From contig NC_069000.1 in NCBI RefSeq assembly GCF_001194135.2, positions 21,593,381 to 21,656,535 of the forward strand: a stretch of DNA of 63,155 nucleotides. The letters run 5' to 3'. The position numbers and the translations under genes are program-made. Source of the DNA: Octopus bimaculoides. Its lineage: Eukaryota. The notes beneath the pieces are model-generated. The model saw only the letters and a program-made list of their open reading frames with translations, ran no database searches and had not been told where the DNA came from. Positions 1-55,401 of the stretch are shown piece after piece (the first letter of the stretch is position 1; every line of letters starts with the position of its first letter).

Positions 1-176
1 ATAGCATAGATAGCAGAGGTGAATATATGCCATACTGCGATGGATTTTAGCTTGTTTACTTGAAGAATGGCCAAGTCAAGTGCTGTTCTCTCTTTTTTCA
101 GCGCATCACACTCTTTACCACTTCATACTAAAAATATCTGCCTATGGATATAATAATAGATTACTTTATTTTTTCT

Positions 177-225
177 GTCTCCGATGAAGGGAAGTACTGG
201 ATCTTCCCAGAAACAGCTGTAAGAC
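177..225 (+). ncRNA. Putative minimal type I hammerhead ribozyme (Penelope-like retroelement-associated type), variant core
   Basis: Order on + strand: stem I GTCT(177-180); core CCGATGA(181-187); stem II GGGAAG(189-194)/CTTCCC(203-208); GAAA(210-213); palindromic stem III CAGCTG(214-219); TA(220-221) completing a GUA cleavage triplet; AGAC(222-225) pairing with stem I. Confidence 0.65.
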
Positions 226-289
226 TCTATCCATAAAATACTTCTCCAACCTTACCATTGCTCTCTTTATCTTTTTATTTTTATATATT

Positions 290-323
<34 letters not shown>

Positions 324-368
324 CAGAATGGTTACAAAATAAAGTGCTTGGTGTTACATTAAATAATA

Positions 369-575
369 TGTTCAAAAATTATATCGAAGTACAAACAAAT
401 GGAAAATACACACACAAAATGTCACTGAATTTTCATCAGTTATTGTCCAAAGGATCAAGTGTGAAATTTATTATGATCCTTTGGATGATAACTGATGAAG
501 ATTTGGCAACATTCTATGTATGTATATATTTTCCATTTCTTCCATTTGTTTGTACTTCTATATAGTTTTTGAACA
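369..575. mobile_element. Short foldback element (MITE-like) with long imperfect terminal inverted repeats
   Basis: tgttcaaaaattatatcgaagtacaaacaaatggaaaatacac at the left is mirrored by ...tattttccatt...tgtttgtacttctatatagtttttgaaca at the right. The same peptide MFKNYIEVQTNG appears on both strands in the ORF track. Confidence 0.7.
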
Positions 576-921
576 TGGTGCACCAGCATGACCGCAGCCA
601 TTTGGCTGAAATAAATAAATAAATAAATAAATAAATATATATATATATATATATATATNNNNNNNNNNNNNNNNNNNNNNNNNNNNNNNNNNNNNNNNNN
701 NNNNNNNNNNNNNNNNNNNNNNNNNNNNNNNNNNNNNNNNNNNNNNNNNNNNNNNNNNNNNNNNNNNNNNNNNNNNNNNNNNNNNNNNNNNNNNNNNNNN
801 NNNNNNNNNNNNNNNNNNNNNNNNNNNNNNNNNNNNNNNNNNNNNNNNNNNNNNNNNNNNNNNNNNNNNNNNNNNNNNNNNNNNNNNNNNNNNNNNNNNN
901 NNNNNNNNNNNNNNNNNNNNN

Positions 922-960
<39 letters not shown>

Positions 961-1387
961 CACACATAAACACGTGTCTCTGTGTGTGCATCTCCTTGTC
1001 TTGATGGTTCATGGTAGTTGTAAGCAAGCTACATCATCAAATATAAAAAGTCTCCTTTGTTTCCAATCTTCAGTGAAGATATATCTAGTTGCAGGGAAAT
1101 TTTACCTTGTCTAGAAAGAAGGTGAGGGTTGGCAACAGAGATAGCATCCAGCCATAGAAAATCTGACTTAACAAATTCAATCTGACCCATGAGTGCATGT
1201 AAAACTGACCATGGGAGTGATGATGATATAAATATTCTTCGCTCTAATCACATCCAGATGAAGAATACTTTGTTTTGCACTTAACTTGGTTACAGAGAAG
1301 TAATATTTGTCTTCTTTAAATATATTCATTCTTCACAATAAATAGAGTATTTTTATTCCTTTTTCAGAAATTATTATCAGAATATAT

Positions 1388-2075
1388 ATGGCTGTGTTAA
1401 GACGTTTGTGTCCCAACAATATGGTTGTGGGTTCAGCACCTTGGGCAAGTATCTTCTACTACAGCCTAAGGCTTTCCAAAGCCTTTGTAGACAGAAACTG
1501 AAAGAAGTTTGTCATATGTGTGTATGTGTGTTTGTTTGTACCTTCCAACCGTCTCACAACTGGTGTTGGTGTGTTACATCCCTGTAACTTAGCAGTTTGG
1601 CAGAAAAGATTAATAGAATAAGATGCAAGCTTAAGAAGTAAAAAGTACTGGTGTTGTTTCGTTCGATTAAAAATTCTTCAGGGCAACGCCCTAGCATGGG
1701 AGCAGTCTAATGACTGAAACAAGTAAAGGTTAGAAGATGCATATCTTTATCTTTTACTTGTTTCAGTCATTAGATTGTGGCAATGCTCAAGCACCTCCTT
1801 AAAGGGTTATAGTCAAAGGAATCCAACTCCAGTACTTACTTTTTAAAGCCTGGTACTAACACTGAACTGCTAAGCTATAAAGATGTAAACAAACCAACAC
1901 TAGTTAAGCAGTGGTGGGGGACAAACCCAAACACACACATAACAAGCTTCTTTTGTTTTGCATCTGCCAAATCCACTCACAAGGCTTTGGTTTGGCTCAG
2001 GTAGATACTTGCCCAAGGGGCCACACAATGGAACCATGTGGTTGAGAACCAAAACATGGTACCACATAGCCATGC
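1388..2075. mobile_element. Two copies of a tRNA-derived SINE (family with 'tggctgtgtggtaag' head) in tail-to-tail inverted orientation
   Basis: Plus copy about 1388-1738 ends aatgactgaaacaagtaaaggttagaagat. Minus copy starts atctttatcttttacttgtttcagtcatt and runs to accacatagccatg at about 2075. Both match the family's younger copy at 3752-4187. Confidence 0.8.
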
Positions 2076-2090
2076 CCTAAATGTGTGTGT

Positions 2091-2411
2091 CTTGATTATC
2101 TGTCCTGGTTTTTAGAACAGAACTATCCTATTCCTGCATGTTATCAGAAGCAACTAAAAGATTAGCAGCAGAAAGGCTTCCAGTCATAAAATACAGCTCT
2201 GCAAAATCATGTCACAGCCATTTTCATTGTCACAGCACAGAAAAGCAAGCATAAAAAGGAACACACACTTATTTTTCAATGCTGGCATGAAAAAGGCTGT
2301 GACATGATTTTGTGTGGTTGCATTTTATGGCTGGACGCCTTTTTTACTGCTTCTTACAACATGCAGGGATATGATTGTTCTGTTCTTAAACCAGAGCACA
2401 CAATAATCAAG
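2091..2411. mobile_element. Palindromic foldback element with roughly 140-bp arms
   Basis: cttgattat...agaacagaac...cctgcatgtt...caaaatcatgtcacagcc is mirrored by ggctgtgacatgattttg...aacatgcagg...gttctgttct...ataatcaag. Confidence 0.75.
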
Positions 2412-2534
2412 ATAAACTGCAAAACCATATAGGTATATTTATGTATATTAATTTAAGTACACTTGTCCATCTGTATTCATTTGGGTATAGAAACAGGACA
2501 AGAAATACTTGATAAATGTAGCTGAGTATAAATA

Positions 2535-3071
2535 CGAAGGGGTGCTGAAAAGTTCCTGGCTTTGGATAAAAGAAAATACAGGAGGATCAGTTAATTATTC
2601 TATTCATCATATTCCCCTAGAACAGTGCTTCCCAAACTTTTTTGGGTTGCCACCCTCTTGACATCCAGGCCACATTCTTAGCGCCCTCACTCCATCTAAC
2701 CATCACAAACATAGACCTCTTTCTGAAGCAAATTCAAAGCAACTGTATTTCACAAATGAAAATTAACCTAATAAACCCATTATTTTGTTATTTTTACAGG
2801 AATCACTCCCCCATTATCGCCCCACTTCTCTTCGATGCCCCATTGGAACTTTCCACTGCCCCCAAGGAGGCAATACTGCCCTAGAAGATTCACACACTTA
2901 TNNNNNNNNNNTCCACTGCCCCCAAGGAGGCAATACTGCCCTAGAAGATTCACACACTTATTGCAGCAGCTCTTCAGTTTTTCTAAGCCCTGTAAAAGAA
3001 CTTGGAAGGTTAGGCCTCCAACCAGGCCTTTCATGATACCCTTAAAGCCAGAACTTTTCAGCACCCCTTCA
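2535..3071. mobile_element. Tc1/mariner-type MITE
   Basis: TIRs cgaaggggtgctgaaaagttcctggcttt and aaagccagaacttttcagcaccccttca, flanked by TA at 2533-2534 and 3072-3073. Confidence 0.8.
2623..2878. mobile_element. hAT-type MITE nested inside the mariner MITE
   Basis: Starts cagtgcttcccaaact. An 8-bp target duplication CCCTAGAA lies at 2615-2622 and 2879-2886. The right TIR is eroded. Confidence 0.7.
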
Positions 3072-3751
3072 TATGTATATTCATGCCAAGTTGATAATCC
3101 CCTTCATTGCTGTTCTGAATTTCCCTCCTTTATATATTGGTTTTGGTGGCTAAAAATAAATATGTTAAGGCTACAGAATATTATCATGATCCTTCTTAGT
3201 TTCCATTGGTCAGTTTTGGTTACATGTTATTGTTGAGAATACTGTTAGAGCATTTAGTGTTATAGCTGGTTCTAGCCTGTCTTAATATGGTCAAGCGATT
3301 GATCCCTGATAGAAATAGGTAGAGGACATTGTGTAGAGGAAGAAAGGTAGATAGATTGATAAGACTATTTATTAAAACAGTGGAGTTTGAAATTACACTG
3401 TAATTGGTGAGGTTATTAAGATTAAATAGGCTTATGTACAAATTAGTAATCATCATTATTATTTAACGTCCATTTTTCCATACTTGCAGAATATTGGAAA
3501 TGAATGACATTGTATAACTATGACACTTATTTACAGTTGTTGTGCCATATCAAGACAAGGAAAAACAACACACACACACTCACATACAAGGGATATCTCT
3601 CAGTTTCTGCCTACCAAATCCATGTACAAAGCTTTGGTTGACCTAGGGCCATTGTAGAAGATACTTGCCCATTGTTGCATTGCAGTGGAACTGAACCTGG
3701 AACACATTCACCTATATAATACAATCAGAATTTTCAGAAAAGCAATTGCCA

Positions 3752-3912
3752 TGGGAGTGGCTGTGTGGTAAGTAGCTTGCTTACCAACCACATGGTTCCG
3801 GGTTCAGTCCCACTGTGTGGCACCTTGGGCAAATGTCTTATACTATAGCCTCGGGCTGACCAAAGCCTTGTGAGTGGATTTGGTAGATGGAAACTGAAAG
3901 AAGCCCGTCGCA

Positions 3913-3959
<47 letters not shown>

Positions 3960-4187
3960 GTGTGTGTGTGTGTGTTTGTGTGTCTGTGTTTGTCCCTCCA
4001 ACATCGCTTGACAACCGATGCTGGTGTGTTTACGTCCCTGTAACTTAGCAGTTTGGCAAAAGAGACCGATAGAATAAGTACTAGGCTTCCAAAGAATAAG
4101 TCCTGGGGTCGATTTGTTCGACTAAAGGCTGTGCTCCAGCATGGCCGCAGTCAAAAATGACTGAAACAAGTAAAAGAGTAAAAGAGA
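3752..4187 (+). mobile_element. Young tRNA-derived SINE with internal (TA)n/(TG)n tract
   Basis: Head ggagtggctgtgtggtaag with B-box-like ggttcagtccc; tail catggccgcagtcaaaaatgactgaaacaagtaaaagag. Related copies near 22335, 24080(-), 25080, 27500, 58160, 60050(-) and 60805. Confidence 0.85.
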
Positions 4188-4920
4188 TACTTGTAGTAGT
4201 AAAAGAAACTGGCGGTGGATACAGCTTGATGATGCGCAAAGAGAGAAATGTCGGCTCTTAAATGTTCTTGTCTTCTGCTTTATGTTACTGATTTATATTT
4301 CATTCAGTTGTGTAGATTTGATACGCAGCATCTTTTTTTTTTATATCTGTGACAAAAATAAATGATGTCATGAATTATCCGCACGCACGCACACACACTT
4401 GAAAGCAGCGAGAACTGTCTTGTCATCGTAAAGGATGACTGTTGACTTGTCTTGTGACTGTGTTTAAAGTGAAGAAGAGTTGCATACCGTGAACCTCACT
4501 CAATCCAGTGGCAAGACCAGGTCAAGATGACTGGATGCAGCGGATGACCAAGATGCCTTGTTTACCTCATCTTGTTCCCTGCACTTTACAATGTATCACC
4601 ACAGCTACATTCCCTCCTATTGAACTGTGAAGGCTTCTTCCACAGAGTCCATTGAATCTGGTCGTCTTGTGCATAGGTAGGCAAGCCCTAAAATGTTGAT
4701 CAACGCATAGCTGGGACACTGACAGGCGCTACCACTCTGGGCCAAAGCAGATGCAGGAACCATAGTGGCTAACAGATGGTTCTACACATCTTGCAACTCT
4801 GGAACTCTCAAGCCATAGCCTCACTGTCAGATGCAGTTTAAAGCCATACCCAGGATACGAACACACACACACTCTCTCTTTCCTTCTGTCTCTCTCTCTC
4901 TCTACTACTTTTGTTCATAT

Positions 4921-5155
4921 CAGTGGTTCTCAATCATTTTTACTTGTGGACCCTTTTCATTACTGTTTTACTCTATTGGACTCCCATAGCCATTTGAAGT
5001 TTTTAAAAAATCCCATTGTATTTTTATATTTAAATTTTATTATGAATTGTAGAAAAAAATCCTAAAATATTTTGTGTATTGTAGAAGTATAAGCAATTTA
5101 TTGTACATAAATTTTAACAACAAAATCTTATATGGACCTTGGTTGAGAACCACCA
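4921..5155. mobile_element. hAT-type MITE
   Basis: TIRs cagtggttctcaa and ttgagaaccacca. Near-identical 8-bp flanks GTTCATAT and GTTTATAT. Confidence 0.7.
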
Positions 5156-5940
5156 GTTTATATAAGTGTACAACACACTTGTGTTTGAAGTGTAGAATCT
5201 AAGATGCCATTTTCGTATGCAAGGTAAATAGCATTAAATTACATGGCACATACACCCTCAAAATGAACCAACAAAGGGACTTCTACAGGGTCACTTCATT
5301 TGCTAGAAATAGATAAATATCCTTTAAACTACACACCAAAACCCTAATGATTTTATACACTCTCCCATAGGATTGATTGCATCACTCCATTCAATGTGAA
5401 TACAGTGTGAGTGCAGGCAAACAAAAAGTGATTAAATGACATCCTTGGAATCTAATCTTGTTTCCTTTACTTATAACAAGCATATAAGACATTTTAACCA
5501 TGAAATTGGGCACCCATAAATATGTTTGTGTGTACCTTTCTTTCGACCTCATATGATGGTTGTAAACAAGCATCATCACTATACAAGTGATGTTGTTCAT
5601 TTTCAATCTGCCATGAAAAAAAGTTGGTGACATCAAGGGTATCTGGTCATAGAAAATCTGCTTCAACAAACTTCGTCTAACTCATGCAAGCACGGAAAAG
5701 TAGATGTTAAATGATCATGTGTGTCATTTATACAAATGACATATGAGCTTCAACCACCAAATGCTGTTTTGTTTCATCTTTTCTATTTTTGATTTTATTA
5801 AGAAAAAAATAAGTCTTTTTTTTTTATATTGTCAAAAGAAGTTAAAAAAAAAAATCTGCTTGCATTGCCATTGTTATTATTATTATTATCATTATTGTTC
5901 ATTTTTTCATTATTTTTGTTGGCTTATGTTTTTCTTCCAG

Positions 5941-6063
5941 GCAGTAACACTGTTTTTGGGTGTGCTTATCCTGTGCCTGTCAATGGTGATCGTCTATTTC
6001 CTAAACAACCGGGCAGAAGTCATCTTCCCTACCACATCAGCTTTCCCTGCTCATGATGGCTAA
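5941..6063 (+). CDS. Terminal coding exon A: transmembrane helix plus short tail (AVTLFLGVLILCLSMVIVYFLNNRAEVIFPTTSAFPAHDG*), gene unidentified
   Basis: Acceptor ttttcttccag| at 5940, open phase-0 frame to TAA at 6061-6063, about 21 hydrophobic residues, clear paralogy to the exon at 9394. Confidence 0.7.
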   Translation, partial: AVTLFLGVLILCLSMVIVYFLNNRAEVIFPTTSAFPAHDG

Positions 6064-8782
6064 ATAACCTGCAATTTCCCAAATAGGCTTGTTCTCTTCT
6101 ACTCATATTTGCATAGGCATGTATTCTTCAACTTAACTCTGTGCACATCCACCTTAGCATTGTCAGTGATTCTGTTCTTAATGTTGATGTTGATGCTGCT
6201 GCTGCTATTGTTGCTGCTGCTGCTTTTATTTGTCTAATTTATTGTCAAATGTATGTGGGTGGGATAGATCATACTTTAGGCCTTTCACACAACTAAATTT
6301 ATTATAGGAAAAGCTAAGAAATTATTTACATTTTTATTTAAATAAGCTACTGGTTTCAATTGTTTTAAAAAGTGATTTAGTCATGCTGAAATAAAAGGAA
6401 AATTAAATTGAAATTAACTAAATTAATCCTTTAGCATTTAAACCAGCTATATCCAGCCAAAATAGTTTACCTGTTTTATGTTCAAATTGGTTAGATCCAG
6501 CCTCTCGTGCCAACCCTGCAATATCATTCTAAAAATTAAGTTACCTCATTGAAATCTCAAAGCTACAAGACGATGCATGGTTAATTTGAAACAATGTGAA
6601 TGAATAAACATTGGTCTTGACAGAATAATGTGAATGCTAAAGGTTAAATTAATTGTTATGAAGAGCATCCAGCCATAAAAACTGTGTCAAATTATTCAAT
6701 GGAGCTCAATACAGTCTTGCAGGTATCCTGGATGTTAAATGATGACAGTGATGAAGACGACAAATATCAGTTGTGGAAGTTCACATAATTTTCTTATAAA
6801 AATCACACTGTGTTGTATTTTGTTTCGTTCTGATTGTTGCTTGGTAAGTAGATAGCTGTGGTAGTAGCCAGCAACTTGACTGCTAACTAGGATCCAGCAA
6901 CAGTCAGAAAGAGAAGAAACAACACCATAAGAAAAACACATGAACTTCTTGAACTGATAGTAAGGAAGATTAATTTGATTTATTTCAGTTTACTTTCTCT
7001 TTTATTTTAGTATGACTAAATCGTCTATTTAAAGTAAATGAAACTGGTAGCTTATTTAGATAAAAATATGATTTCTTTCTTTAAATAAAGTTCTCAAAGC
7101 ATTTCCTTATTTTTGTCTTTATATATGTTTGTGTGCATATGTGCGTGTATATATATGTATGTGTTTATATATGAATGTGTGTGTATGTGTATATATGCAT
7201 GTATCCGTGTGTGTGTGTGTGTAATGTTACCAGTAGGAGCTTAGCACAACAACACAAACACTTAACTGTACATGTACACCCAATATAATCCAACAAGAGA
7301 GCTTCTACATGGTCACTCAGTCTACTAGAAATAGCAGGCAAATATCCTTAAGTCATGCACTATTTCTTAATCATTTTGGAAAAAGAAAGACATTAGACAA
7401 TGCAGTCTTATATCTGAAACACTTTGCTCATTAGTCTACTGGATTAGGATCAAAACAATAATGTAACAAGAAGACTTCTTATGAGATTTGCTTAGCTTGC
7501 TAGAAAGAACAACAAAGTATCCTTCAAATCAAAACCCTATCTTAAAAATGTAAGACACATTGGATAATGTAATCCTAGATACACTATATCTGAAAAGTGA
7601 TTGTTTGCTTACAGCTGGATCATCTTTAATCATAGGCCTGCTAAGTCAAAGCAAACCTGGGGTTAAACAATCCCCAATATTTCTATGTACTTGTCATCTA
7701 AATAATTATCAAACCTGTTCAAGCGAGCACAAATCACCGTCAGTTTCCTTGAGCCCCAAAGATTATTAACTTGACTCCATGTCTCATGCTTGAAATTGAG
7801 TGTTTGCTGAGAAAACCACAATGGAATGTTGGTTAACATCATTGCATTTATGTTGCCTAAGGAGCCTCAAGGAAAGGCCTGAACATCTCATTTTTTTTTT
7901 AATCCATATAAAATCTTTGTTGTACTTAGACAAAAAGAAATTTATGTACATTTTGTAAATCAAGTTACTTAAAAGTAGTCTTCTTTAGAAATGTCTTTTA
8001 TTCACAAATTCAAGAAAATGAAGATTATTAGTGTGTGTATATGTTGGACATCTTTGCTCTGTATTTCATGTTTCTGTATATTGTCTTTGAAAATTTTTCA
8101 CAATGTATTTATCCTCCTTTTCCACCTCTTTTCTCTCTCTCTCTCTCCCTCTCTGTGACACCAACTGTATTACTATAAAAGAAAAATTAAACAAAGTGGA
8201 GTAGGTTTGTAATTCAAAGACTGTGTGATGTGAGACTATTGCAAGTGGGAATTTAAATTGGGGACATGGATTCGAGCTTGTTCAGACTTGACTGTTAACT
8301 TCTTAAAATTCACTAACATAAACTCATTGTAACCATTGCAGAAATGAACACTTTTGTTTCAGTTGAAAGACACAACTGATACTTTATTTTCATTGTTTGA
8401 AAAGAGAAAGAAAACATTTCCTTTTTAATGACATTAATTTGAATTTAACCCTTTGTGTACATGATCAAAGAGCTGTTAAATGGGGCTGTAAAAGAAGGAA
8501 AGGTTGTGTTCATAGTCTTTGCAGGTCCTCATAGACAGATGAGATTGATACAGATGAAGCTCATTTTAAACATTTGTAGATTGATCTCTGTAGGAAAATC
8601 ATAGTTGGGGTTTGTAATGGATTTCAGTGCGTATTTTACAGCTGCAGGCCATTGTTGTTGTTTACCATTTGATGTTTGGTCCTTCCTTTATTTATCTAAT
8701 GTTTTTTTTATGTCCATGCAAGAATAAGATTTTGGATGATCCTACATACCAACTCAAATCACATTGGAGAACCCTCATTTAA

Positions 8783-8999
8783 CCCTTTAGCATTCACATT
8801 CTGTCAAAAGTAATTCTTATTTATTCAAATTGTTTTGAATTAATCATGCATTATCTTGTAGCTTTAAGATTTTGACAAGGTAACGGTTAATCTTTAGAAC
8901 GATATTACAAGGTTAGTGTAAAAGGCTAGATCTGGCTAGTCTCAACATAAAACAGGTGAAATATTTTGGCCGGATGTGACTTGTTTAAATGCTAAAGGG
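8783..8999. mobile_element. piggyBac-type MITE (TTAA-flanked, CCC...GGG ends)
   Basis: ttaa|ccctttagcatt ... aatgctaaaggg|ttaa. Relatives near 6430-6650, 15335-15480, 25441-25530 and 51300-51520. Confidence 0.8.
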
Positions 9000-9393
9000 T
9001 TAAGACATTTATGAACAAACAAAAACCTATATTATTCACTTTTCATTTATTTCTTAATAGTATTGTCTATTCTGAATTGTTGAAAAGTTTCATCATACAT
9101 AGCAACATGGCACAATTCAACATAATTTCTATGTATTTGTTCATTCATTCTCAAACAAGTTGATTTAATTTTGATCAATACAGGAAACAAAGCAGATGAC
9201 ATCAGTGATGATGGTTTCTTAGAAAAGACAGTTCGACTGCTCCAATTTCTCAAAAATTAACATTATTTCAGTTGTAATTAATATCCTTTGACATCAGACA
9301 TCTTCATAAGCAATGTTACATGTATTTTTTTCATAATCTTTGTTGTTGTTTTTTTTTATTAAACATTTATTGTTTTTCTTCTTTCTATTGCAG

Positions 9394-9504
9394 ACTCTCA
9401 TTTTGTTACTGGGTATCATCATCTTTGTGGTCTCTTTGGTTGTGGTCTATGTGTTAGTAGAGAAAGCAGATATTATTTTTCAGACTGCTCACAAACACTA
9501 CTAA
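9394..9504 (+). CDS. Terminal coding exon B: transmembrane helix plus short tail (TLILLLGIIIFVVSLVVVYVLVEKADIIFQTAHKHY*), paralog of exon A
   Basis: Acceptor tttttcttctttctattgcag| at 9393, phase-0 frame to TAA at 9502-9504. Aligns without gaps to exon A, sharing G7, S14, V18-Y19, A25 and I28-F29. Confidence 0.7.
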   Translation, partial: TLILLLGIIIFVVSLVVVYVLVEKADIIFQTAHKHY

Positions 9505-10029
9505 CTAGCTTGAACCTGAATCTAAACTAACTTTACCTAATTTAACTTAAAAAAAAACTAGACTACACTTCTAGTAAGCCACTATGGCAAAGCTTATGTC
9601 AATATATTTGTTAGCACAGAATACTTCTTGCTTTCCTTTCAATTTTGTTTTGGTAAGGCAAATGAAGCACAAGAACAAAGAAGAAATTTCTCACACGAGG
9701 GACCAAAGAACCATGAACCAGTTTCAACATCAAGAATTGATAATGATTTTTTTCCTCTTTCTACTAAACTATCATCTTTTCATTCCCCTCCTCTCTGAAT
9801 ACATACACACGCACACGCACACACATATTTATATATACATATGCTCCACACACACACACACATTTATATATACATACGCACCCCCCACACACATTCACAC
9901 GCACACATTTTGTGTATGTGTTTCCAATAACAGGTGTGGATGTTATACTTTCAACTTTTCCATGTAAGTTGTCTACTTAATAATAAGGAGTGTATAAAAT
10001 ATTTGTTCATATTTATGTGCACTGATGTT

Positions 10030-11760
10030 AGCAGTATCACTACCATTCTATATCCGCTTTTCCAAGCTTGCATGGGTTGGGTGGGTCTTCTCCAGTACAC
10101 CATCTCACCATTTATTGCAATTGTTTGACATCTTGAGATCAGCTTTCACTGCTTCTATGTCTTCCTTGGTTTTTCCCCTTCCACTCAGATTGCTTGCATT
10201 TTTTAAAATTAACTAGCACCCTCCATATGCATCAAATGCCCATAACAGTGTTGTCTTCTTTCTTGTACACAACATTTGAATCCTCTTATACTCTTGATAG
10301 CTCATTTCATTTCTTTTCACATCTTCCATGTTCAGTGTCCATGTTTTGCTACCATGCAACCTCACACTTTGTCAGTAGCATTATACAGTCAACTCTTTTC
10401 CAGGTTAGTGAATCCCTTTGTTGCATGCAAAACCAGTAGCTTCCTGAACTGGTTTAACCTCATCCTTATTCTGGTTTCTATGCTTTTGGAACATCATCCT
10501 CTACCATTAATTATGTCACCTACTTAATGGAAGCTATCAACTTGTAGTTGATAACTATGGAGTCTTTCAAGAATTTAAGGGAATCCATTTCATGGGTGAC
10601 CTTAATGTTCACTACTCAAGCGTCTGCTATATATGGAGTCTTTTCTTCTCTGTCTACCTGCCTGTGATTCCACTGTATTTGTTGTACTCTGGAAGTTTAC
10701 ATTTGGTACACTGTGCAGAGTTACTACTTAACTTCTTTTCTGCATATTGAGCAAGGCCGCTTCCCATTAGAAAGGTGGCTATGCTTGATGTGCTAACTAG
10801 AACTTTTGTCTCTGCAAGGTTTATTTTGAAGCCTCTAGATTCTTGCTTCCATGTTTGGAATATTTTTCATAATTTTCATTTGATCAGCTATGAGAACTAG
10901 ATCATTCAGAAGTTCCCTTGGATAGACAGTCTGAAATTCTGTGAATTGGCTGGACAACAATTATAAACAGTAGCGAGCTAAGAACCAAACCTCGATGAAT
11001 GCTTATCTGCAAGATTTTTCACTTAACTCATTACTAACTTTAATTTTGTTGGCAGCATCTCTCTACATCACTCACTCCATCCACTTGCCTTCACCTAGTT
11101 CTTTTAGCGATGACCTGACTACAGAACATGATCTCCAAACTGCCTCTCATCTAAGCAACTTGTCTTTCTTGTCACTTGTACTATAATCCTTTCTGTTACT
11201 TTTACAACCAGGTTCATCAACTTGATGACTCTGTACTTACTTCTTTCTGTCAAATTTCCTTTGCCTTTGTAGTTCTTGTTGATGATAGTGCTACACCAGT
11301 CATTAGGTATGACTCATCCTTGTACTGCCTGATTGACTACATAAGTGATTATTAGCACATGTCCTCCTTCATTGGATATTTTCAGTATCTCACTAGCTAC
11401 CTTTGATGGTATCGCTACTTTCACTGCCTTCATGTCCTCGATTGCACTTTTGACCATGCTGCTGTCCACTTGAACAGCTGCTTCCTCTGTTGGATTTACT
11501 TGGGGTAGAGCCTCTCTCATTCTGTTCAGTCAGTGACTTCATTGTGCCCCTTTCTTCTTGGTGTCAGTCACAAAAGTGTGTCATTTTCTTTCCATACACA
11601 CTTTTCCCCAATGACCTCTTGTTTCATACTGAAACACTTCTTTGCAATTCAGAACACCTTACTTTCATCTTCTTTCTTTGCTATCTTTATCTGACATCTA
11701 GCTTCTTTTTTTTTAGGTATCTGATATGATTCCTTGCTTCCCATTTTCTCCAAATCTTTC
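10030..11760 (-). mobile_element. Decayed RTE-clade LINE (reverse transcriptase to C-terminus)
   Basis: Minus-strand peptide VKSAIEDMKAVKVAIPSKVASEILK resembles the RT N-terminal KA.GP.....E.LK motif. An RGFKCCVQERR-like C-terminal segment lies near 10270 and the RTE tail near 10040. Many stops and frameshifts. Confidence 0.75.
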
Positions 11761-11925
11761 TAGGTCAATCCTTTAGCTTTTATGGCAGTATCTAAAGTAT
11801 CACCATGTTACCTTTCTGTCAAGCTGGAACTCCCACTCACAAGTTCTGTTTGTGACTTACAACTGGTTGTATCACAGAAACTCCCAGTTGTCCTTAGTTA
11901 CGTATCTATCATGTGTGTGTGTGTG

Positions 11926-11959
<34 letters not shown>

Positions 11960-12050
11960 TACATGTATACATCTGTATGTATCTATACATATGTAATATA
12001 TTATATGTATATACGTCTGTGTGTGCATGCACATGTGTATATATATATAT

Positions 12051-12093
<43 letters not shown>

Positions 12094-12616
12094 CACACAC
12101 ACACCAGGTATTGAATTCACATTAATCAGAGGACCAGCTCTGCTTGTCTCTTTTTATCAACTCAATGATAATAAAAACATATCCTCCTCTTCAGCTTCTT
12201 TTGTTTTCATCCTCTTCCAGTTTTTTTCTTCCACAACTGAGATTTTCCTTGCGTGTTATCTTCATCTTCTCATTTCATTTCACTGTCCTTAACAGATCTC
12301 TCCCCATGATCAGCACCACTGGATCTGACTAAATTCTTGTTCCTCACCACATTCAATTTTTGCAACTGCTTTGATTCTTTTCAAACTTTTACTAGATTTG
12401 GGTCCTGTATTGCTTGTTACCTGATGAAAGTGCAGGCTTCTACAAAACATTAAAAGTGGGGGAGAGTGTTTTGGTGGAGAAGATTAATAACTTGTTGTTT
12501 AGCCCTGATTTGAACACAACTGTTGATCAAATAAAGACATTCCAACCACCATTATTATCCTGTCTTCTTTTTTTCAGACAGGCTACCTATGACTACATTT
12601 TATTAAATGTGCTCTT

Positions 12617-12651
<35 letters not shown>

Positions 12652-13235
12652 CATCATCATCGTTTAACGTCCGATTTCCATGCTAGCATGGGTTGGACGA
12701 TTTGACTGAGGACTGGTGAAACCGGATGGCAACACCAGGCTCCAAATATATATATATATATATGTATGTATGTATGTGTATATGTATATATGTATATATA
12801 TCTTTAAATAGTAGAGCACAGTTGGGAAGATTTGGCTGCTATTTCTATTGGGGGAAGGTTCATATTGATTTGTAAAAGAAATATTCAATAATGCTTTGAT
12901 GATTCAGACGTTTGGTAATACATTGGTTTCTGAGTTGGGAGTGCCTAGGTGGAAGTGGCATGAGATGAACCTGCTTTGAGGAGCAAAGGCTACTGTTGTT
13001 TGTTCATTGTTGATACTGTTTTCCTAAAAAGTAATTATATTTGGATTAAAACAATATTTTTTTTTTGTTTGAGATTTAAAATTTTGTTTCTGTCAGTAGA
13101 TAAGAGATAGACTTATTTTCCTTTAGACTTAGTACATTCTGAAACAATTACCTTTCTCACTAAATCTTGTATGTAAATGTTTCTGTTTAGTCTATATATG
13201 AGTGTGTGTGTGTATTTAGTCACACAAATATGTGC

Positions 13236-13272
<37 letters not shown>

Positions 13273-14606
13273 CCCTTCCCTTCCCTAATACTCTCTCTGT
13301 TAATCTCTCTATATATTCTTACTGTAATAAACTTTTTCTCTCAGCACCTCACTTAAATTCATCACCCTTTCTTCTGCTCTCTTGTTCTCTCTTTGTGTGA
13401 TGGGGATCTTTACTCATTGTAAATCAAATTTACATGTTAAACTTCACCAGATCTGTTGACATGAAGGAAGCATCTAGTACCCCTTATAAAGTGGTTGGTG
13501 TTAGGAAGCCATCCAGCTGTAGAAACCTTTCCAAAACAGAGACAGTTGAGCAAGACATGGTCCTGTGATTTGTTGAACTGCTCAGCCAATGCCAGCATGG
13601 AGAGCAGTTATACAATGGATGAGAAACACTATTCAATATGTACAGTAGAATTTATTTGTTTGAATATAGTAATTTGCTTTGTTGCTTCTCTGAATTTTTT
13701 GCTTTGTACATTTATTGAAGTGACATGAAGCATTAGCTTGAAAGGAATGCACATATACATATCCTTACTCTAATTCCCTTTTTTTCTCCCCTTCACCATT
13801 TTCTAGCTGTCTCTCTCCCCCTCTTTCTCCGTTTCTCTCTCTTGTTGCTCACACGTGACCATCATCCATCTTTCTTTTCCTCATGTAATCATCTTTCTTT
13901 TCTTTAAGGACTGGACATCTCTCTCTTCTATCTTTTCTCCTTTCAAAGAAAATATTCCTCTTGCATTCACTGTTTTACCCTCTGTTATATCGCAATACTA
14001 CACAGTGGCTGTGTGAGCATCTTCATCTCCGTCGCCACTGTTATATCACACGTTCGAATGACCTCTACTCAACTTCTAGACTTCTCCCTCTATATCTACG
14101 TATTGGGCTAGCCTACTTCATCGTCTGGGGGTGTCGACACAACACCCTCATTCTAGTCTATCGACCCTCCATGTTTGTTTTCGGTCGTTTTCCTTGTATG
14201 TTTCCACTGTCCTGTTTTTGTTCCCAACTTTGACCCTCCATAAATCCCAAATTATATATATATGTATATATACATACATGTGTATATACTTGTGTGTGTG
14301 TATATATGTATAGATATATATATATGTATACATATATGTGCATATATATATGTTTGTGTACATATATATATGTGTAGTATATATATATATATGTGTGTGT
14401 GTGTGCATATATACATATATGTGTATATATATGTTTAGTGGTATTTTGTTCTGAGTTCAGATTCCGCCGAGGTCGACTTTGCCTTTCATCCCTTTGGGGT
14501 CAATTAAATAAGTACCAGTTATGCACTGGGGTCAATGTAATCGACTTAATCCTTTTGTCTGTCCTTATTTGTCCCCTCTATGTTTAGCCCCCTATGGGAA
14601 ATAAAG

Positions 14607-14645
<39 letters not shown>

Positions 14646-15118
14646 ATGCAATCACACAGCATATGGTTGTGCGATTAAGAAGTCTGCCTCCCAGCCCATT
14701 TTGTGGCACCTTGGGCAAGTGTCTTGTACTGTAAGCCCTGGGCCAATTCAGACCTTATCAGTGGATTTGATATGTGGAAACTGAAAGAAACCTGGTGCAT
14801 GTGTTTGTGTCAGCATCATATAAGAAGTGTTATTTTGTTTCCAGTCTTTGAAAATGTCTGGCCAGGAAGGAATACTATTTTGCTTGGGAACAGGTGAGGG
14901 TTGGTGACAGTAAGTGCATCTGGTTGTAGAAAATCTGCCTCAGTGGATTCATTCTGACCCATGCAAGCATGGAAAAGTAGATGATAAAACAATTACTACG
15001 ACACATGTAGTAACAAGGATAACCAAAAGACTATTTGTTGTATTGGTGTGAACACCTTTAGTTAGTAATAACAAAACTGTTTTGGCATTTCACACCTTTT
15101 TTTATTTTCTCTTCTCAG

Positions 15119-15133
15119 GCATTTTTTAACCAG
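15119..15133 (+). CDS. Candidate 15-nt frame-preserving microexon (AFFNQ in phase 0)
   Basis: cacctttttttattttctcttctcag|GCATTTTTTAACCAG|gtaaaa: long pyrimidine tract, CAG|GTAA donor, length divisible by 3, located in non-repeat sequence. Confidence 0.4.
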
Positions 15134-16481
15134 GTAAAAAAAAAAAGAGTTATAAATATTTATCAATCAGTGATTTTAGTAGAATCATTAATGCTGGACA
15201 AAATACCTTTTCAGTATTTAATTTAATTACTTTACATTTTGATTTCATATCTCACTGAAGTCAGCTTTGCCTTTCATTCTTCCATCTGGCAGTGGTTGAT
15301 AAAATAAAGTACCTGTCAAGTACTGGGGTCTATTTAACCCTTTATTAATCATGCATTATTTCGTAGCTTTGAGATTTTGATGATGTGACTGTTTATTTTT
15401 AGAATGACATTGTAGGGTAGATGTGAGAGGCCTCATCTGGCTGGTTTGAACATAAAACAGGTAGAATATTTGGGCTGGATGATGGACTCTCCCGTCAAAG
15501 ATGACAGATGAGTGTTCAGCTTTTGCCAAGTGACCTGCATAACTAATTTATAGTGGTCAAACTTATATGTTGTACATTAGCTTACTCTCTCCTTCAAATC
15601 AACATTTCCTAAACAGGTGAATGGTGTATCACATCAGGTGTTGAAGTGATTGCAGAGCAATGTGAGATGCAGTCAACACAAACCTAATCTAGGGACTGAA
15701 ACCATGATCCCACACTTATGAGTGCAACACCCTAACCACTAGGCCATATGTCCTATAGCCAGTATAAATGCAAAAGAGTTAATCCAGGAATCTTGCTCTT
15801 CTCACGTTTGTGGCCATGTGAATTTATAACAAATTGTTATTGTTGGTGAGGTTTCGTTGATGTTTACCCTGCTATCACCATCACCAACCAACTCCCACTT
15901 CTCAAATTGAACAAGCATTTCTGTCCAGATCATCCCATTTTTATTTATATCTAGGACTTCATTGTCCAATTGCAGCAAGTTGAGTGGCCTCACAGAAGCT
16001 CTCTTGCTGTCATGGTGAGTAGTCTGATGTGGCAGAAAACTTTCACTAAATAGCTTAATCATTTATTTTTTTTCTTTCCAATCTCTAGAGTTCTTGCAGC
16101 ACTTAATGTGCTTAATGTGCTTAAGTTGCTGTTACCAACTCTCATTAACTTTTGAAGACTTCATTCTTAATAAAGGAAAAACTTCTTTTTAAAACCTCAT
16201 AATCAAGTCATTGTCATTTGCCAAGTGAAAGATGTATTTTGTTAAAAACCCGGAAGAAACATGCTAATTTTTACTTGGGGGTGGGGTGGGGNNNNNNNNN
16301 NNNNNNNNNNNNNNNNNNNNNNNNNNNNNNNNNNNNNNNNNNNNNNNNNNNNNNNNNNNNNNNNNNNNNGGGGGTGGAAATTAAAACTTCTTTATTTTCT
16401 AATCCTATTGCTGTAAATGTTTCAATGCTGTCTCTGCAGGGTTCACTGTCCTTAAATTTCAACTGAATTATTATTATTTAA

Positions 16482-29258: not shown

Positions 29259-31451
29259 CACTGGTATGTATTTGGGAATTTTAAAAAATTTTTATTTCTA
29301 TTCATGAATGTGATCTTATGTGTTTCTTGGGCTGGTGATTTTAAATATCTAAACCATTTTGTTCTTTCACATAAAGCTTTTTAATAAAATACAAATTAAT
29401 GATTAAAAAAAATGTGAACTTTTAATAAATTGTTACTTTATTAAAATGAAACAAGAAATCATGGAAAAGCATATTCTGCTAGTTTTAAGAACATATGTAT
29501 TCCAAATCAACATGAAATGAATAATGAATCATTAACATCAGATCAAATGAATGTTAAAAAATATATGCTCCTAATGGTTGATTCAAATGAAAGAGGACTG
29601 CTTTGAATTTCGCTTGTGTCGTGCATCTCGACCATCACGTGCCAATGACCAGCAGTAATTCACAATCATACTGACATTCCATTTGCCCTGGTATTAAGCT
29701 TCCATGGTGCAAATATCTGGATAGAATCACTCTCCTTGTTCCTCACTGTAGTTTCCACAATTCTCGGGAAAATAGTCAAGATGTGAGTGCAAAAACTGCA
29801 TCTTGACACTCATTCTAGACTCAAGTTGTTGGAAACTTGAAATCAGATCTTGGATCACTTTTTCATATTCTGGGGAGTGGCTATTTCTCAAGAAGTTTTG
29901 GACCATCTGCTTGAAGGAAAACCATTCACCTCAATACCTGCTAATGCTTCTTCAAAATACTTGTCCTTCATCAATTCCCTAATCTGATGGCCAACAAAGA
30001 TTCCTGCTTTTACTTATACAAGGAAACTTTGACTCCAGGTACTTGAAAGCAACTCCATTCTTGTTCAGAGCTTTCACAAAATGTTTCATAAGCCCTAGTT
30101 TGATGTGGAGTAGTGGCAGCAGAATTTTCTTGGAGTCAACTTGTGGCACAGCTTTCACGTGATTTCTGCGTAAGAAACTGGTTCTTGGTGGTCAGTCTTT
30201 TTGTTCATAGTGCTGGCTGTCTGCCCTACTACTCCAAAGACAAAGGAAACAGGGATACTTGGTGTATCCTCTTTAAAGATCTAGTAGGAGAGCAATGACT
30301 TTTAAATCACTACAAATGAGAAAATTGTGATCATGGTACTTGATGACAGTTATTAATGTCTTCATATTTCCATAAATTTCTTACATTTAGACACTGTTGC
30401 CAATTGACACAGATGCAGCTGTGTTGTCATTGTAGAGATGAACAGCTTTTAAATTTCTGTTAGAAGAATCAATGAAGAGTCTCCGTTCATCTACTTTGTA
30501 TGACATCCCATGTGTTCAATAAGGCTAGAAATATTTGAGCAGTAAACTAAGGAATCCTGTTTCTCAAAGAACTCAGTGAATTCCACCTCACAATGATGGC
30601 ACCAAGCAAATGTTGTTCCAGGAACTAGAAACCTGTGTCCCTTCAGTCTAGATCTAGAGTAAAGTTACTGTGCACTTTCGTTTGGAAGGTTAAGGTCTCT
30701 CACCAAGTCACTTAGCTCAACTTGGTTGAAAAGTTTGGGATCGTCATTTGTTGGTGGTTCATAGTCTACTTCGATCTCTTTTGTACCACCAGTATCAGAC
30801 TCTGATGAAATTTTCCATGTCTCAGATGGCACAGGTACAGAAATACCATCTGAGTGTGGAACAAGCCTTATTGCTGATGGAATATTTAGGTATATAATGT
30901 GATCCTTAGTCTTGTTGAATCCAGCTATTTTAGTCATACAGAAGTATCAGTCGTCATAATAGTTCATCTACTTTCGCCATGCCATTGGTACTCTAAAGGG
31001 TATACATTTCAGTTTTCCAACTGACCACATTTAGAGCTTACTAATGCAACTCTTGCAAGCTCTGTGAGGTGCAAATGCCTTGTCCTGGTCTCTCAACCTT
31101 GCAGCCAAAATAAGCTAAGTAGCAGCGCTTCAACAAAGGAGTAATATATTGCTCTGGGAATCCGAAGGGGTAAATTACCTGCAGACATAGCAAAATATGG
31201 CTGGTGAATTTATGCAGCCTCTAGATATTTTCACTAAAAAAAAAAAAAATTAGATTTAATATTTAAGTCAATATAAGGTAAGCATTTTCATTGGTATACG
31301 TATATTATACAAAGAGAAAAGTAACGTTTCTGTATAACTTGAGAACCTGATGTAAAAGAGATGAGTAGAAAATACTTTGAATCACTATTTTTAAAATATA
31401 TTTTGAAAAAGATACCATACAATCAATAAAGAAAACCCATGCAGACCAGTG
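29259..31451 (-). mobile_element. Full-length (2193 bp) decayed DNA transposon, most likely Chapaev3 (CMC group, RAG1/Transib-related transposase)
   Basis: Termini CACTGGT...ACCAGTG with TTA duplicated at 29256-29258 and 31452-31454. Encloses the transposase remnant listed next. Confidence 0.8.
29583..31228 (-). pseudogene. Disrupted Chapaev3-type transposase
   Basis: Minus-strand motifs in order: SRGCINSPAIFCYVC; LNIPSAIRLVPHS; ELSDLVRDLNL; RLFIDSS..NLKAVHLYN; ICSDLKV; YTKYPCFLCLWSSR; LLPLHIKLGLMKHFVKAL; GIFVGHQIREL; FLHSHLDYFPENCG..SEEQGE; YQGKWNVSMIVNYCW. The start is decayed to ATA at 31228, and there are several stops and frameshifts. Confidence 0.85.
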
Positions 31452-49874: not shown

Positions 49875-50271
49875 TGTATAGAGAGAGAGAGAGATAGAAC
49901 AGAGTGAAAGTGACAACTGTGCTGGGAAATAAAGAATTAAGTGAAATGACAAGGCAAAGGTTACGAATGAAGTTTGTGAGACAGAGAAGAGACAAAAACT
50001 GAAGGGTGAAATGCAGCAAAAAAAAAAGAAGAGAAAAAGAACACAAAGTCAGTTTAAACAAAGACTATAATTCAAGGGTTTCATTTTGCAAAGGACTATG
50101 GTTAACACAACTGTCCACAATGAAATAATACTTCTATGTAATTTTGATACATTAAATATAAAAATTTCCACAGATATTCTTAAAGTATCTTAAAGAAAAG
50201 CTTTTCTTTTAATGGAAACAATTGAAGAGGAGGGGGGCATATTGTTACAATATTTTAATGAAAACCATTAA

Positions 50272-50415
<144 letters not shown>

Positions 50416-50599
50416 GTTTGTTGCAGTGAATAAAAATTAGCTTTGTGATTGAGAAGCGTGCTTGAATCTTCAATAAAAGAATTTAGAAAATCTCATTTTG
50501 ATCAAAAATATACATTAAAATTGGAATTTATAAGAATATTTTTAGACATGGTAGGCTTACATAGTTTCAACTAATAAATAAGCAGCTTTCTTTATTATA

Positions 50600-51250: not shown

Positions 51251-51529
51251 ATGGACTGAGTAATTGAAAAAGCTATAGCACGAGTGATAAGAAAAAGAAT
51301 TAGCACATAAACCAGCCAAACTTGGCCTAAATATTCAACTAATTTTATATTCAAAAAAGACAGATCCAGCCTATCATTCTTCCCTACAATGTCATTCTAA
51401 AAATAAACTATCACATCATTGAAATCTCGAAGCTATGAGACAAATACTTGATTAATTCAAAACAGTGTGAATAAATAAGCATTACATTTCACAAAATAAT
51501 TTGAATGCTAAAGGGTTAAATGAGGTGCC

Positions 51530-55358: not shown

Positions 55359-55359
<1 letters not shown>

Positions 55360-55399: not shown

Positions 55400-55401
<2 letters not shown>

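What the first reader, a model, noticed from the sequence alone, without database searches (positions are those of the whole stretch)
5941..9504. Duplicated alternative last exons encoding two versions of a C-terminal membrane anchor
Seen: two exons 3.3 kb apart, both with good acceptors in phase 0, both ending in TAA, and aligning without gaps (AVTLFLGVLILCLSMVIVYFLNNRAEVIF versus TLILLLGIIIFVVSLVVVYVLVEKADIIF). The amino-acid pattern is conserved while the DNA has diverged, which suggests selection. Neither is called as such by the ORF track. No convincing coding exon lies between them, so tandem whole-gene duplication is less likely. Inference: one gene switches between two TM-plus-tail modules (PTTSAFPAHDG versus QTAHKHY), possibly changing organelle targeting. 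Identity is unresolved; the G-x6-S-[ML] spacing recalls the last helix of SLC38-type transporters, and LG[VI]...VY recalls synaptobrevin-type tail anchors.
Basis: partly seen in the sequence, partly recalled or inferred. Interest (0 to 1): 0.72.

Follow-up and report, generated by a model that had tools for sequence, protein, structure and literature searches.

The report
Nicastrin's two alternative membrane-anchor exons
The two look-alike exons are the already-annotated alternative last exons of the octopus nicastrin gene (a γ-secretase subunit); they give the protein two versions of its membrane helix and tail, an arrangement shared with other molluscs.

Summary
Exon A (5941-6063) and exon B (9394-9504) follow good acceptors, end in TAA and align without gaps. 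Their similarity is far above chance, and their DNA divergence is typical of coding sequence under selection.

The gene is nicastrin (NCSTN), the large type I glycoprotein subunit of γ-secretase. It is not a SNARE or an SLC38 transporter. The window is probably Octopus bimaculoides. Public gene models already hold both products: a 711-aa isoform ending in exon A and a 707-aa isoform ending in exon B, identical over their first 671 residues. The shared upstream exon lies outside the window; in two sister species the last intron is 12.5-13 kb.

Both exons are intact, in the same order, in four octopod genomes, with dN/dS of about 0.3 for each. Haliotis and Crassostrea have the same tandem pair, and Mytilus and Mizuhopecten have isoform pairs of the same kind. 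One annelid has a second such exon; a nemertean and a starfish do not.

Both versions keep the glycine, serine and tyrosine needed to bind APH-1. The residues that distinguish the two classes lie on the opposite face of the helix and in the cytosolic tail. So the likely result is two assembly-competent γ-secretase variants. The functional difference is untested, and I found no paper describing it.

The parts
1..5940 (+). 3' part of the last intron of nicastrin. The shared penultimate coding exon (…YSTWTESIWDNDAMSVRVFLVPSNKLQ) lies upstream of the window.
   Evidence: tblastn with full-length nicastrins finds no other nicastrin exon in the window. In O. vulgaris and O. sinensis the penultimate exon ends 12.5-13 kb upstream of exon A.
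5901..5940 (+). Polypyrimidine tract and CAG acceptor of exon A.
   Evidence: Sequence. It lies within a 235-nt run (5901-6135) that is identical in three Octopus species, the longest such run in the 7-kb alignment.
5941..6063 (+). Alternative last coding exon A: 40 codons plus TAA. It encodes the TM helix and cytosolic tail of nicastrin isoform X1 (711 aa).
   Evidence: Identical to the C-terminus of P0131 and P0010. 0 of 123 nt differ from O. vulgaris and O. sinensis. An intact orthologue is present in Argonauta, with dN/dS about 0.30. A-type tails are joined to the nicastrin body on intron-free transcript contigs of decapodiforms.
6084..6146 (+). Conserved non-coding element just downstream of exon A's stop codon. 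It contains ATAGGCATGTATTCTTC. Its role is unknown; it may regulate exon or poly(A) choice.
   Evidence: It is the only flank still alignable between Octopus and Argonauta (66 nt, 85% identity).
6390..6395 (+). AATAAA, a candidate poly(A) signal for transcripts that end after exon A. A second AATAAA lies at 6603-6608.
   Evidence: Hexamer scan. Both hexamers are present in all three Octopus species. Actual use was not tested.
9326..9393 (+). Polypyrimidine tract and CAG acceptor of exon B.
   Evidence: Sequence. It lies within runs identical in three species, 9326-9437 and 9439-9535.
9394..9504 (+). Alternative last coding exon B: 36 codons plus TAA. It encodes the TM helix and cytosolic tail of nicastrin isoform X2 (707 aa).
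   Evidence: Identical to the C-terminus of O. bimaculoides XP_014778224.1 (P0129). 1 of 111 nt differs from the sister species. It is the annotated last exon in Argonauta, with dN/dS of 0.32 overall and 0.18 for the core.
9505..16455 (+). Putative long 3' UTR of the exon B isoform (low confidence).
   Evidence: The O. vulgaris gene model ends at L001:86468, which maps to about window 16455. No AATAAA or ATTAAA occurs between 9505 and 12170.

Best explanation
Shown. The two exons are the alternative 3'-terminal coding exons of the Octopus nicastrin gene. Nicastrin is the type I glycoprotein subunit of γ-secretase. Both gene models share the same first 671 residues. The penultimate exon, which lies upstream of the window, is joined either to the acceptor at 5941 (exon A, 711-aa isoform) or to the acceptor at 9394 (exon B, 707-aa isoform). 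Each exon supplies the single transmembrane helix, the juxtamembrane …A(E/D)xIF segment, a short cytosolic tail and its own stop codon.

Inferred. Use of A probably goes with cleavage and polyadenylation after A. Use of B requires the donor to skip A and gives a different, long 3' UTR. Both versions keep the glycine, serine and tyrosine (human G676, S683, Y688) that nicastrin needs to bind APH-1 and the ER-retrieval receptor Rer1p. So both should enter γ-secretase. The residues that distinguish the two classes lie on the helix face pointing away from APH-1, in the juxtamembrane charges (NxRAE against (V/A)(E/D)KAD), and in the tail (P…P..DG against a basic tail that ends in Tyr in Octopus and P0005). 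The switch would therefore make two γ-secretase populations. These would differ on the outward surface of the nicastrin helix and in its cytosolic tail, for example in sorting, lipid environment or accessory partners.

The exon pair is old. It predates the split between octopods and decapodiforms. It is probably the same pair seen in gastropods and bivalves.
For: Identity of the gene. A profile of the two peptides finds only nicastrin among solved structures, at the TM helix (human residues 672-698; E = 3e-4 for 2n7q). The exhaustive HMMER search finds nicastrin C-termini. O. bimaculoides P0131 and P0129 end exactly in exon A and exon B. Both carry the Pfam Ncstrn_small and Nicastrin domains and the DYIGS motif.

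One gene, two ends. The isoform pairs are identical up to residue 671. Each upstream exon occurs once in the O. vulgaris and O. sinensis loci, with A and then B downstream.

Selection on both exons. 0/123 and 1/111 nt differences against about 8% background. Both are intact with acceptors in Argonauta, with dN/dS about 0.30 and 0.32, while the introns no longer align.

Transcripts. A-type tails sit on intron-free contigs; for example, 676 aa on a 2,167-nt contig.

Wider distribution. Isoform pairs of the same kind are annotated in Haliotis, Mytilus, Mizuhopecten and Crassostrea. Tandem exons in the same phase are found in the Haliotis, Crassostrea and Paralvinella genomes. Within-species pairs are sisters in 0-1% of bootstraps, and a cephalopod-only duplication appears in 4%.

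Helix faces. Human E669, T672, G676, S683 and T687 face APH-1 (PMC4726005). The same residues plus Y688 are needed for APH-1 and Rer1p binding (PMC2064021). A/B identity points to that face, at 262° against 200-260°. The class-specific TM positions 1, 2, 5, 9, 13 and 20 fall in a 120° arc centred 168° away (P = 0.01).
Against: I saw no RNA read or transcript contig that joins the penultimate exon to exon B. Its use rests on gene models from four octopod annotations. The only search for such transcripts was uninformative, because it also missed known positives.

The helical-face statistics are marginal and depend on the assumed helix pitch: P = 0.06, and P = 0.002-0.11. They are also partly circular, because conserved positions cannot be discriminating ones.

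Most A/B differences are conservative (V/I/L, R/K, E/D), so the two proteins may be functionally equivalent. The T672-equivalent is Thr in exon A but Ile in Octopus exon B. The T687-equivalent is Val in both.

Orthology of cephalopod A/B with the gastropod and bivalve V/T exons is not resolved by 29 residues. Poly(A) site use was not tested. I could not count APH-1 or presenilin paralogues in octopus.
Confidence: 0.85

Rival explanations
1. Both exons are used, but the two proteins are functionally equivalent. What selection maintains is the choice between two 3' ends, that is, different 3' UTRs and poly(A) sites that control mRNA stability, localisation or translation. The duplicated coding exon is only the vehicle for this.
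For: Most A/B substitutions are conservative, and the APH-1-binding residues are kept in both. Exon B appears to be followed by a UTR of several kb, while exon A has AATAAA signals within 330-540 nt. A conserved non-coding element sits directly after exon A.
Against: Class-specific residues and tails are kept across deep splits. The A-type …RAE…P..DG is shared by octopods and decapodiforms. The B-type …KAD… is shared by Octopus, Argonauta and P0005, with a terminal Tyr in Octopus and P0005. T-type tails in other molluscs and single-copy tails in vertebrates also end in Tyr. The discriminating TM positions cluster on one helix face. That pattern is not expected if only hydrophobicity were under selection.
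Confidence: 0.12
2. One of the two exons, most likely B, is a decaying duplicate that is rarely or never spliced in. Its appearance in gene models is an annotation artefact.
For: All transcript-derived cephalopod nicastrins recovered here carry the A-type tail. No B-junction transcript was found.
Against: Exon B has 1/111 nt differences among three Octopus species, against about 8% background. It has an intact frame, acceptor and stop in Argonauta, with dN/dS of 0.18-0.32. It is the exon chosen by the Argonauta annotation. It resembles the ancestral single-copy exon of outgroups. An odd O. vulgaris model (P0130) also enters exon B's acceptor. The transcript search that found nothing also missed known positives.
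Confidence: 0.03
3. The similarity is a chance resemblance between two hydrophobic reading frames in T-rich DNA, or the two exons belong to two different genes.
For: T-rich sequence often translates to Leu/Ile/Val/Phe-rich peptides. The shared upstream exon is not in the window.
Against: The A-B score is 68 against a next best of 30-38 in 120,249 windows. The codon-position pattern is 12/25/9 of 29. Both exons match nicastrin specifically. The sister-species loci contain a single set of upstream exons.
Confidence: 0.005

Closest known systems
Human nicastrin (NCSTN) TM helix and C-terminus (PDB 5A63 and others; isolated TM domain 2N7Q)
   Same: Same protein family and same position in the protein. 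The pattern x3-L-x2-G-x6-S-x4-Y-x5-A-(D/E)-x-(I/L)-F aligns without gaps to human residues 670-698. The G, S and Y of the APH-1/Rer1p-binding face are kept in both octopus exons.
   Different: The review consulted (PMC4285130) attributes mammalian γ-secretase heterogeneity to presenilin and APH-1 variants only. Octopus and other molluscs have two alternative versions of the nicastrin helix. The T687-equivalent is Val in both octopus exons.
APH-1a short/long splice variants and the PS1/PS2 and APH-1a/b paralogues as sources of γ-secretase heterogeneity
   Same: Subunit variants that are mutually exclusive within a complex give several distinct γ-secretase complexes. APH-1aS and APH-1aL are produced by alternative splicing of one gene (PMC4285130).
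   Different: There the variation is in presenilin and APH-1. Here it is in nicastrin, and it replaces the whole membrane helix. Whether the octopus variants differ in activity is unknown.
LAMP2 exons 9a/9b/9c; otoferlin exons 47/48; SLMAP tail anchors TA1/TA2 (recalled from my own knowledge, not tested here)
   Same: Duplicated alternative terminal exons, each encoding a transmembrane segment plus a short tail, which produce isoforms with different trafficking or function.
   Different: These are unrelated proteins. In LAMP2 the functional difference lies in the cytosolic tail. SLMAP and otoferlin are tail-anchored. Nicastrin's helix is a subunit interface inside a four-protein complex.
Drosophila Dscam1 exons 17.1/17.2 (recalled from my own knowledge, not tested here)
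   Same: Two alternative exons encode alternative transmembrane segments of one type I protein. They are reported to direct different subcellular localisation.
   Different: The Dscam1 exons are internal and mutually exclusive, without stop codons. The nicastrin exons are terminal, each with its own stop and 3' end.
Synaptobrevin-type tail anchors and the last helix of SLC38 transporters
   Same: Only a hydrophobic C-terminal helix containing Gly, Ser and Tyr.
   Different: The host protein has a hydrophobic N-terminus, nicastrin small and large lobes and a ~670-residue ectodomain. It has no SNARE motif and no amino-acid transporter domain.

Membership tests
Nicastrin (γ-secretase subunit) | Nicastrin small-lobe and large-lobe domains in the protein that carries these exons | tested here: met
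   P0131 (ends in exon A) and P0129 (ends in exon B): PF18266 at E = 1.9e-57 and PF05450 at E = 4e-45.
Nicastrin (γ-secretase subunit) | Conserved DYIGS motif in the ectodomain | tested here: met
   DYIGS at residue 329 of P0131.
Nicastrin (γ-secretase subunit) | Type I topology: N-terminal signal sequence, a single C-terminal TM helix and a short cytosolic tail | tested here: met
   The N-terminus MKGYTIPFSLILLWAIFLWNAAAIR is hydrophobic. This was judged by inspection, with no predictor run. The only other hydrophobic segment noted is the exon A or exon B helix, followed by 19 or 14 residues.
Nicastrin (γ-secretase subunit) | TM helix with the polar face (human T672, G676, S683, T687, Y688) that binds APH-1 and Rer1p | tested here: met
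   Gapless alignment to human 672-698. Exon A has T-G-S-V-Y and exon B has I-G-S-V-Y at these positions. G, S and Y are kept, and the Thr positions are partly replaced.
Nicastrin (γ-secretase subunit) | Physical assembly with APH-1, presenilin and PEN-2, and a requirement for γ-secretase activity | not testable with these tools
   Needs co-immunoprecipitation and rescue experiments.
Alternative last exon event | Both terminal exons are joined to the same upstream donor exon | tested here: met
   Gene-model isoforms are identical through residue 671 in O. bimaculoides and in O. sinensis/O. vulgaris. There is a single penultimate exon in L001 and L002. This evidence is at the level of gene models.
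Alternative last exon event | RNA evidence for each junction | tested here: inconclusive
   A-type junctions are seen on intron-free transcript contigs of decapodiforms. No B-type junction transcript was recovered, but that search also missed known positives.
Alternative last exon event | A separate poly(A) site after each exon | tested here: inconclusive
   AATAAA at 6390 and 6603 after exon A. The nearest hexamer after exon B is at 12170. The O. vulgaris model ends at about window 16455. No 3'-end data were available.
Tail-anchored SNARE (synaptobrevin type) | SNARE motif next to the anchor, no signal peptide, cytosolic N-terminal domain | tested here: not met
   Pfam finds only nicastrin domains. 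All significant structure matches are nicastrin.
SLC38 amino-acid transporter | Multi-pass amino-acid transporter domain upstream of the last helix | tested here: not met
   No such domain in P0129 or P0131. The host protein is single-pass.

The most novel reading that the evidence does not exclude
Switching of the nicastrin membrane helix is an ancient, conserved way of making two kinds of γ-secretase in molluscs and possibly annelids. Both kinds dock on APH-1 through the same conserved face. They present different outward surfaces and cytosolic tails, and so differ in sorting, lipid environment, partners or substrate handling. Nicastrin would then supply the kind of heterogeneity that presenilin and APH-1 paralogues supply in vertebrates. 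I found no paper that describes this.
Probability: 0.4. Interest if true: 0.6.

Novelty: already known. Interest (0 to 1): 0.35.

Why it matters
For this window the result is mainly a correct annotation. An 'unidentified membrane-anchor switch' turns out to be the two annotated C-terminal isoforms of nicastrin.

Beyond that, the review I consulted (PMC4285130) attributes γ-secretase heterogeneity to presenilin and APH-1 variants only. Here, a swap of nicastrin's single helix is under purifying selection in octopods. The same arrangement appears across molluscan classes. The swap spares the APH-1 and Rer1p contact residues.

If the two forms behave differently, they are a natural experiment. 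They would show what the outward face of the nicastrin helix and its cytosolic tail do, which is hard to separate from assembly defects by mutagenesis. They would also offer a way to study how invertebrates diversify Notch and other γ-secretase-dependent processing.

Tried and rejected
- **Word-index search with the joined peptides.** It found nothing. This was a false negative, because P0010 and P0129 contain the peptides exactly.
- **Upstream exons in 1-5940.** I looked by eye and by tblastn and found none.
- **Families recalled from memory before testing.** These were SNAREs (VAMP, syntaxin), LAMP2, otoferlin and other ferlins, SLMAP, the SERCA2b tail, p24/TMED, iGluR and Cys-loop M4 helices, and ALDH3A2. 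None fitted the spacing. The structure search returned nicastrin and nothing else significant.
- **P0001.** This ankyrin-repeat protein was the top hit of the exhaustive search. It is a spurious repeat match.
- **Locus look-ups.** They failed for Mytilus, Mizuhopecten and Liolophura, and for the shorter Crassostrea isoform, probably because only the longest product of a gene is indexed. The Sepia gene is too long to fetch. So a decapodiform B-type exon could not be sought in a genome. P0005 is a B-like ORF from an unidentified assembly.
- **B-junction transcripts.** The search was uninformative.
- **Literature.** I found no paper on nicastrin isoforms with alternative anchors. I have an unverified memory that early Drosophila nicastrin papers reported alternative C-terminal forms. 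The one I tried was not held.
- **Other scans.** Rfam and tRNA scans of the window found nothing. A Pfam scan of eight other ORFs found nothing above threshold. An inverted-repeat scan for selector-type pairing found only a repeat-derived pair.
Full report
**1.

Exon A (5941-6063) and exon B (9394-9504) each follow a polypyrimidine tract and CAG, and each ends in TAA.

The window is T-rich, and T-rich DNA often translates into hydrophobic peptides. I therefore scored each 29-residue core against all 120,249 six-frame windows. The A-B score is 68. The next best scores are 30 (against A) and 38 (against B), the mean is -29 and the SD is 13. No third copy exists in the window.

The DNA has the signature of an old coding duplication:
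- Codon positions 1, 2 and 3 are identical in 12, 25 and 9 of 29 codons.
- Synonymous sites are saturated (pS 0.80), while pN is 0.36.
- The flanks do not align.

**2. The gene is nicastrin**

A first word-index protein search found nothing. That later proved to be a false negative. The plus strand upstream showed no recognisable exon.

From memory, the pattern G-x6-S-L-x3-Y…K-A-D-x-L-F recalled the C-terminal helix of nicastrin, so I tested it.
- **Solved structures.** A profile of the two peptides found five significant matches. All are nicastrin, and all align to the TM helix and juxtamembrane segment (human residues 672-698). E was 3e-4 for the isolated-helix entry 2n7q. The next hit was unrelated, at E = 2.6.
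- **Exhaustive HMMER search.** It returned proteins whose C-termini match. Pfam calls the two long ones nicastrin.
- **Family search.** P0010 (nicastrin isoform X1 of O. vulgaris and O. sinensis) ends exactly in exon A.
- **Cluster members.** Each Octopus species has a 711-aa and a 707-aa isoform. They are identical for 671 residues and then continue with exon A or exon B.

The window's exon B peptide equals O. bimaculoides XP_014778224.1. O. vulgaris and O. sinensis have Phe where the window has Leu. So the window is probably O. bimaculoides.

P0131 and P0129 carry both nicastrin Pfam domains, the DYIGS motif and a hydrophobic N-terminus. The anchor is therefore the single helix of a type I glycoprotein. 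It is not a tail anchor, and the SLC38 and synaptobrevin resemblances are wrong.

**3. Gene structure**

In the O. vulgaris (L001) and O. sinensis (L002) loci, tblastn places 14 upstream coding segments, each matched once. The penultimate exon ends 12.5-13 kb before exon A, and exon B follows A by about 3.4 kb. The window has only 5.9 kb upstream of exon A, so the shared donor exon lies outside it. These loci also exclude a tandem gene duplication.

**4. Both exons are under selection**

- **Within Octopus.** Across 7 kb aligned among the three species, identity is about 92%. Exon A has 0/123 differences and exon B has 1/111. The longest runs identical in all three species are 5901-6135, which contains exon A, and 9326-9437 plus 9439-9535, which contain exon B.
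- **Argonauta.** An unannotated A-type exon lies 2.2 kb upstream of the annotated B-type exon. It reads AVTLSVGLLLLVFSLVIVYLINKRAELIFPNTTPLPVNDG*. Both exons have acceptors in the same phase.
- **dN/dS, Octopus against Argonauta.** It is 0.30 for A and 0.32 for B, or 0.18 for B's 29-codon core. The introns no longer align.
- **Decapodiform transcripts.** Nicastrins of 676-702 aa on contigs of 2.2-3.9 kb cannot hold introns. All of them carry the A-type tail.

I found no transcript contig with a B junction. However, that search also failed to return proteins that contain the query exactly, so its silence means nothing.

**5. Distribution beyond cephalopods**

NCBI isoform pairs in Haliotis, Mytilus, Mizuhopecten and Crassostrea differ in exactly the same way. 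The body is identical, and two alternative ~37-44-residue ends begin at the same codon.

| Genome | Terminal TM exons found |
|---|---|
| Haliotis | Two in tandem; 'V…PQS' type proximal, 'T…YYTY' type distal |
| Crassostrea | Two in tandem; V-type proximal, T-type distal |
| Paralvinella (annelid) | Annotated exon plus an unannotated second one 0.7 kb downstream, with an acceptor |
| Lineus (nemertean) | One, within the gene plus 10 kb |
| Asterias (starfish) | One, within the gene plus 10 kb |

In bootstrapped neighbour-joining trees of the 29-residue core:
- The two exons of one species are sisters in 0-1% of replicates.
- A cephalopod-only duplication appears in 4% of replicates.
- The cephalopod A class gets 61% support and the B class 77%.
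- In the unresampled tree, the distal T-type exons group with the single-copy exons of outgroups.

Exon B is distal, starts with Thr and ends in Tyr, like T-type tails and vertebrate tails. Exon A is proximal and has a Ser/Thr/Pro-rich tail, like V-type tails. A single old duplication is therefore the simplest reading. However, 29 residues cannot settle orthology across classes.

**6. What the switch changes**

Position p of the exon corresponds to human residue 669+p.
- In human nicastrin, E669, T672, G676, S683 and T687 face APH-1. V696-A700 also contact the membrane and APH-1 (PMC4726005).
- The same residues plus Y688 are needed to bind both APH-1 and Rer1p, which compete during assembly. 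That paper numbers them T670, G674, S681, T685 and Y686 (PMC2064021).
- Exon A has T-G-S-V-Y at these positions, and exon B has I-G-S-V-Y.

In six species pairs, the two exons agree mainly at positions 4, 7, 10, 14, 18, 19 and 29. The direction of this conservation is 262°, and the APH-1 face lies at 200-260°. Positions 5 and 9 on the opposite face are never identical. The periodicity test gives P = 0.06.

In cephalopods, the positions that separate all A-type from all B-type exons within the helix are 1, 2, 5, 9, 13 and 20. They fall in a 120° arc centred 168° from the APH-1 face. P is 0.01 at 100° per residue and 0.002-0.11 for 97-103°. The remaining fixed differences are juxtamembrane (N-x-R-A-E against (V/A)-(E/D)-K-A-D) and in the tails.

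My inference is that both isoforms can assemble, and that they differ on the outward surface of the helix and in the cytosolic tail. This step is not shown.

**7. Known or new**

The two isoforms are in public annotation for this species, so the feature itself is already known. Swapping a membrane anchor through alternative last exons is also a known kind of event. In the searchable literature I found no description of nicastrin isoforms with alternative helices. A review attributes γ-secretase heterogeneity to presenilin and APH-1 variants only (PMC4285130). I have an unverified memory of alternative C-terminal forms in Drosophila nicastrin, and could not read those papers.

**8. Verdict**

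The gene is nicastrin. The functional meaning of the switch is open and can be tested directly.

Noticed in passing
window 6084-6146: A 66-nt stretch starting 21 nt after exon A's stop is still 85% identical between Octopus and Argonauta, although every other flank has diverged beyond alignment. It contains ATAGGCATGTATTCTTC, which includes GCATG. From my own knowledge GCATG is the core of the Rbfox-type splicing-regulator motif. Its role is unknown.
   Followed up: partly
window 8360-8482: A 123-nt block in the interval between exons A and B is identical in three Octopus species. It is the second longest such run in the 7-kb alignment. The overlapping ORF (8367-8531) has no significant family match.
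   Followed up: partly
window 6423-6626 and 8798-9003: An inverted repeat of about 200 nt, about 80% complementary, with arms about 2.2 kb apart. It spans most of the A-B interval, and one arm includes the AATAAA at 6603. A related copy lies elsewhere in the intron of O. vulgaris, so it is probably a repeat family. It could loop out the interval in the pre-mRNA, but that is speculation.
   Followed up: partly
L001 (O. vulgaris) about 75545-79030; window about 5960-6117 and 9394: A third O. vulgaris model (P0130, 698 aa) removes most of exon A through an internal GT at about 5961. It then uses a mini-exon at about 6087-6117 with a GC donor and enters exon B's normal acceptor out of frame. The product would lack the helix. 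It is probably a non-productive or noisy transcript, but it hints that the B acceptor is used in RNA.
   Followed up: partly
L003 26128-26250 (Argonauta hians); L007 about 30635-30770 (Paralvinella palmiformis): Unannotated second terminal TM exons of nicastrin, each with a good acceptor in the conserved phase. Argonauta has an A-type exon upstream of the annotated one. The annelid has a second exon (LACLIGGLIFFLVSMAMVFFCNRRNSILF…) downstream of the annotated one.
   Followed up: yes
tool behaviour: The word-index protein search missed proteins that contain the query exactly (P0010, P0129, P0128, P0006). Negative results from it should not be read as absence.
   Followed up: yes
window 10000-14000 and 50000-58000: Strong strand-asymmetric composition. 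GC skew reaches -0.22 and AT skew -0.24 at 10-12 kb, and GC skew reaches +0.35 at 56-58 kb. Long CT-rich and GA-rich low-complexity reading frames lie there. Ten N-gaps and many TA/TG/CA microsatellites occur across the window. No tRNA or Rfam family was found, and the ORFs I scanned outside the nicastrin exons had no Pfam match above threshold.
   Followed up: partly
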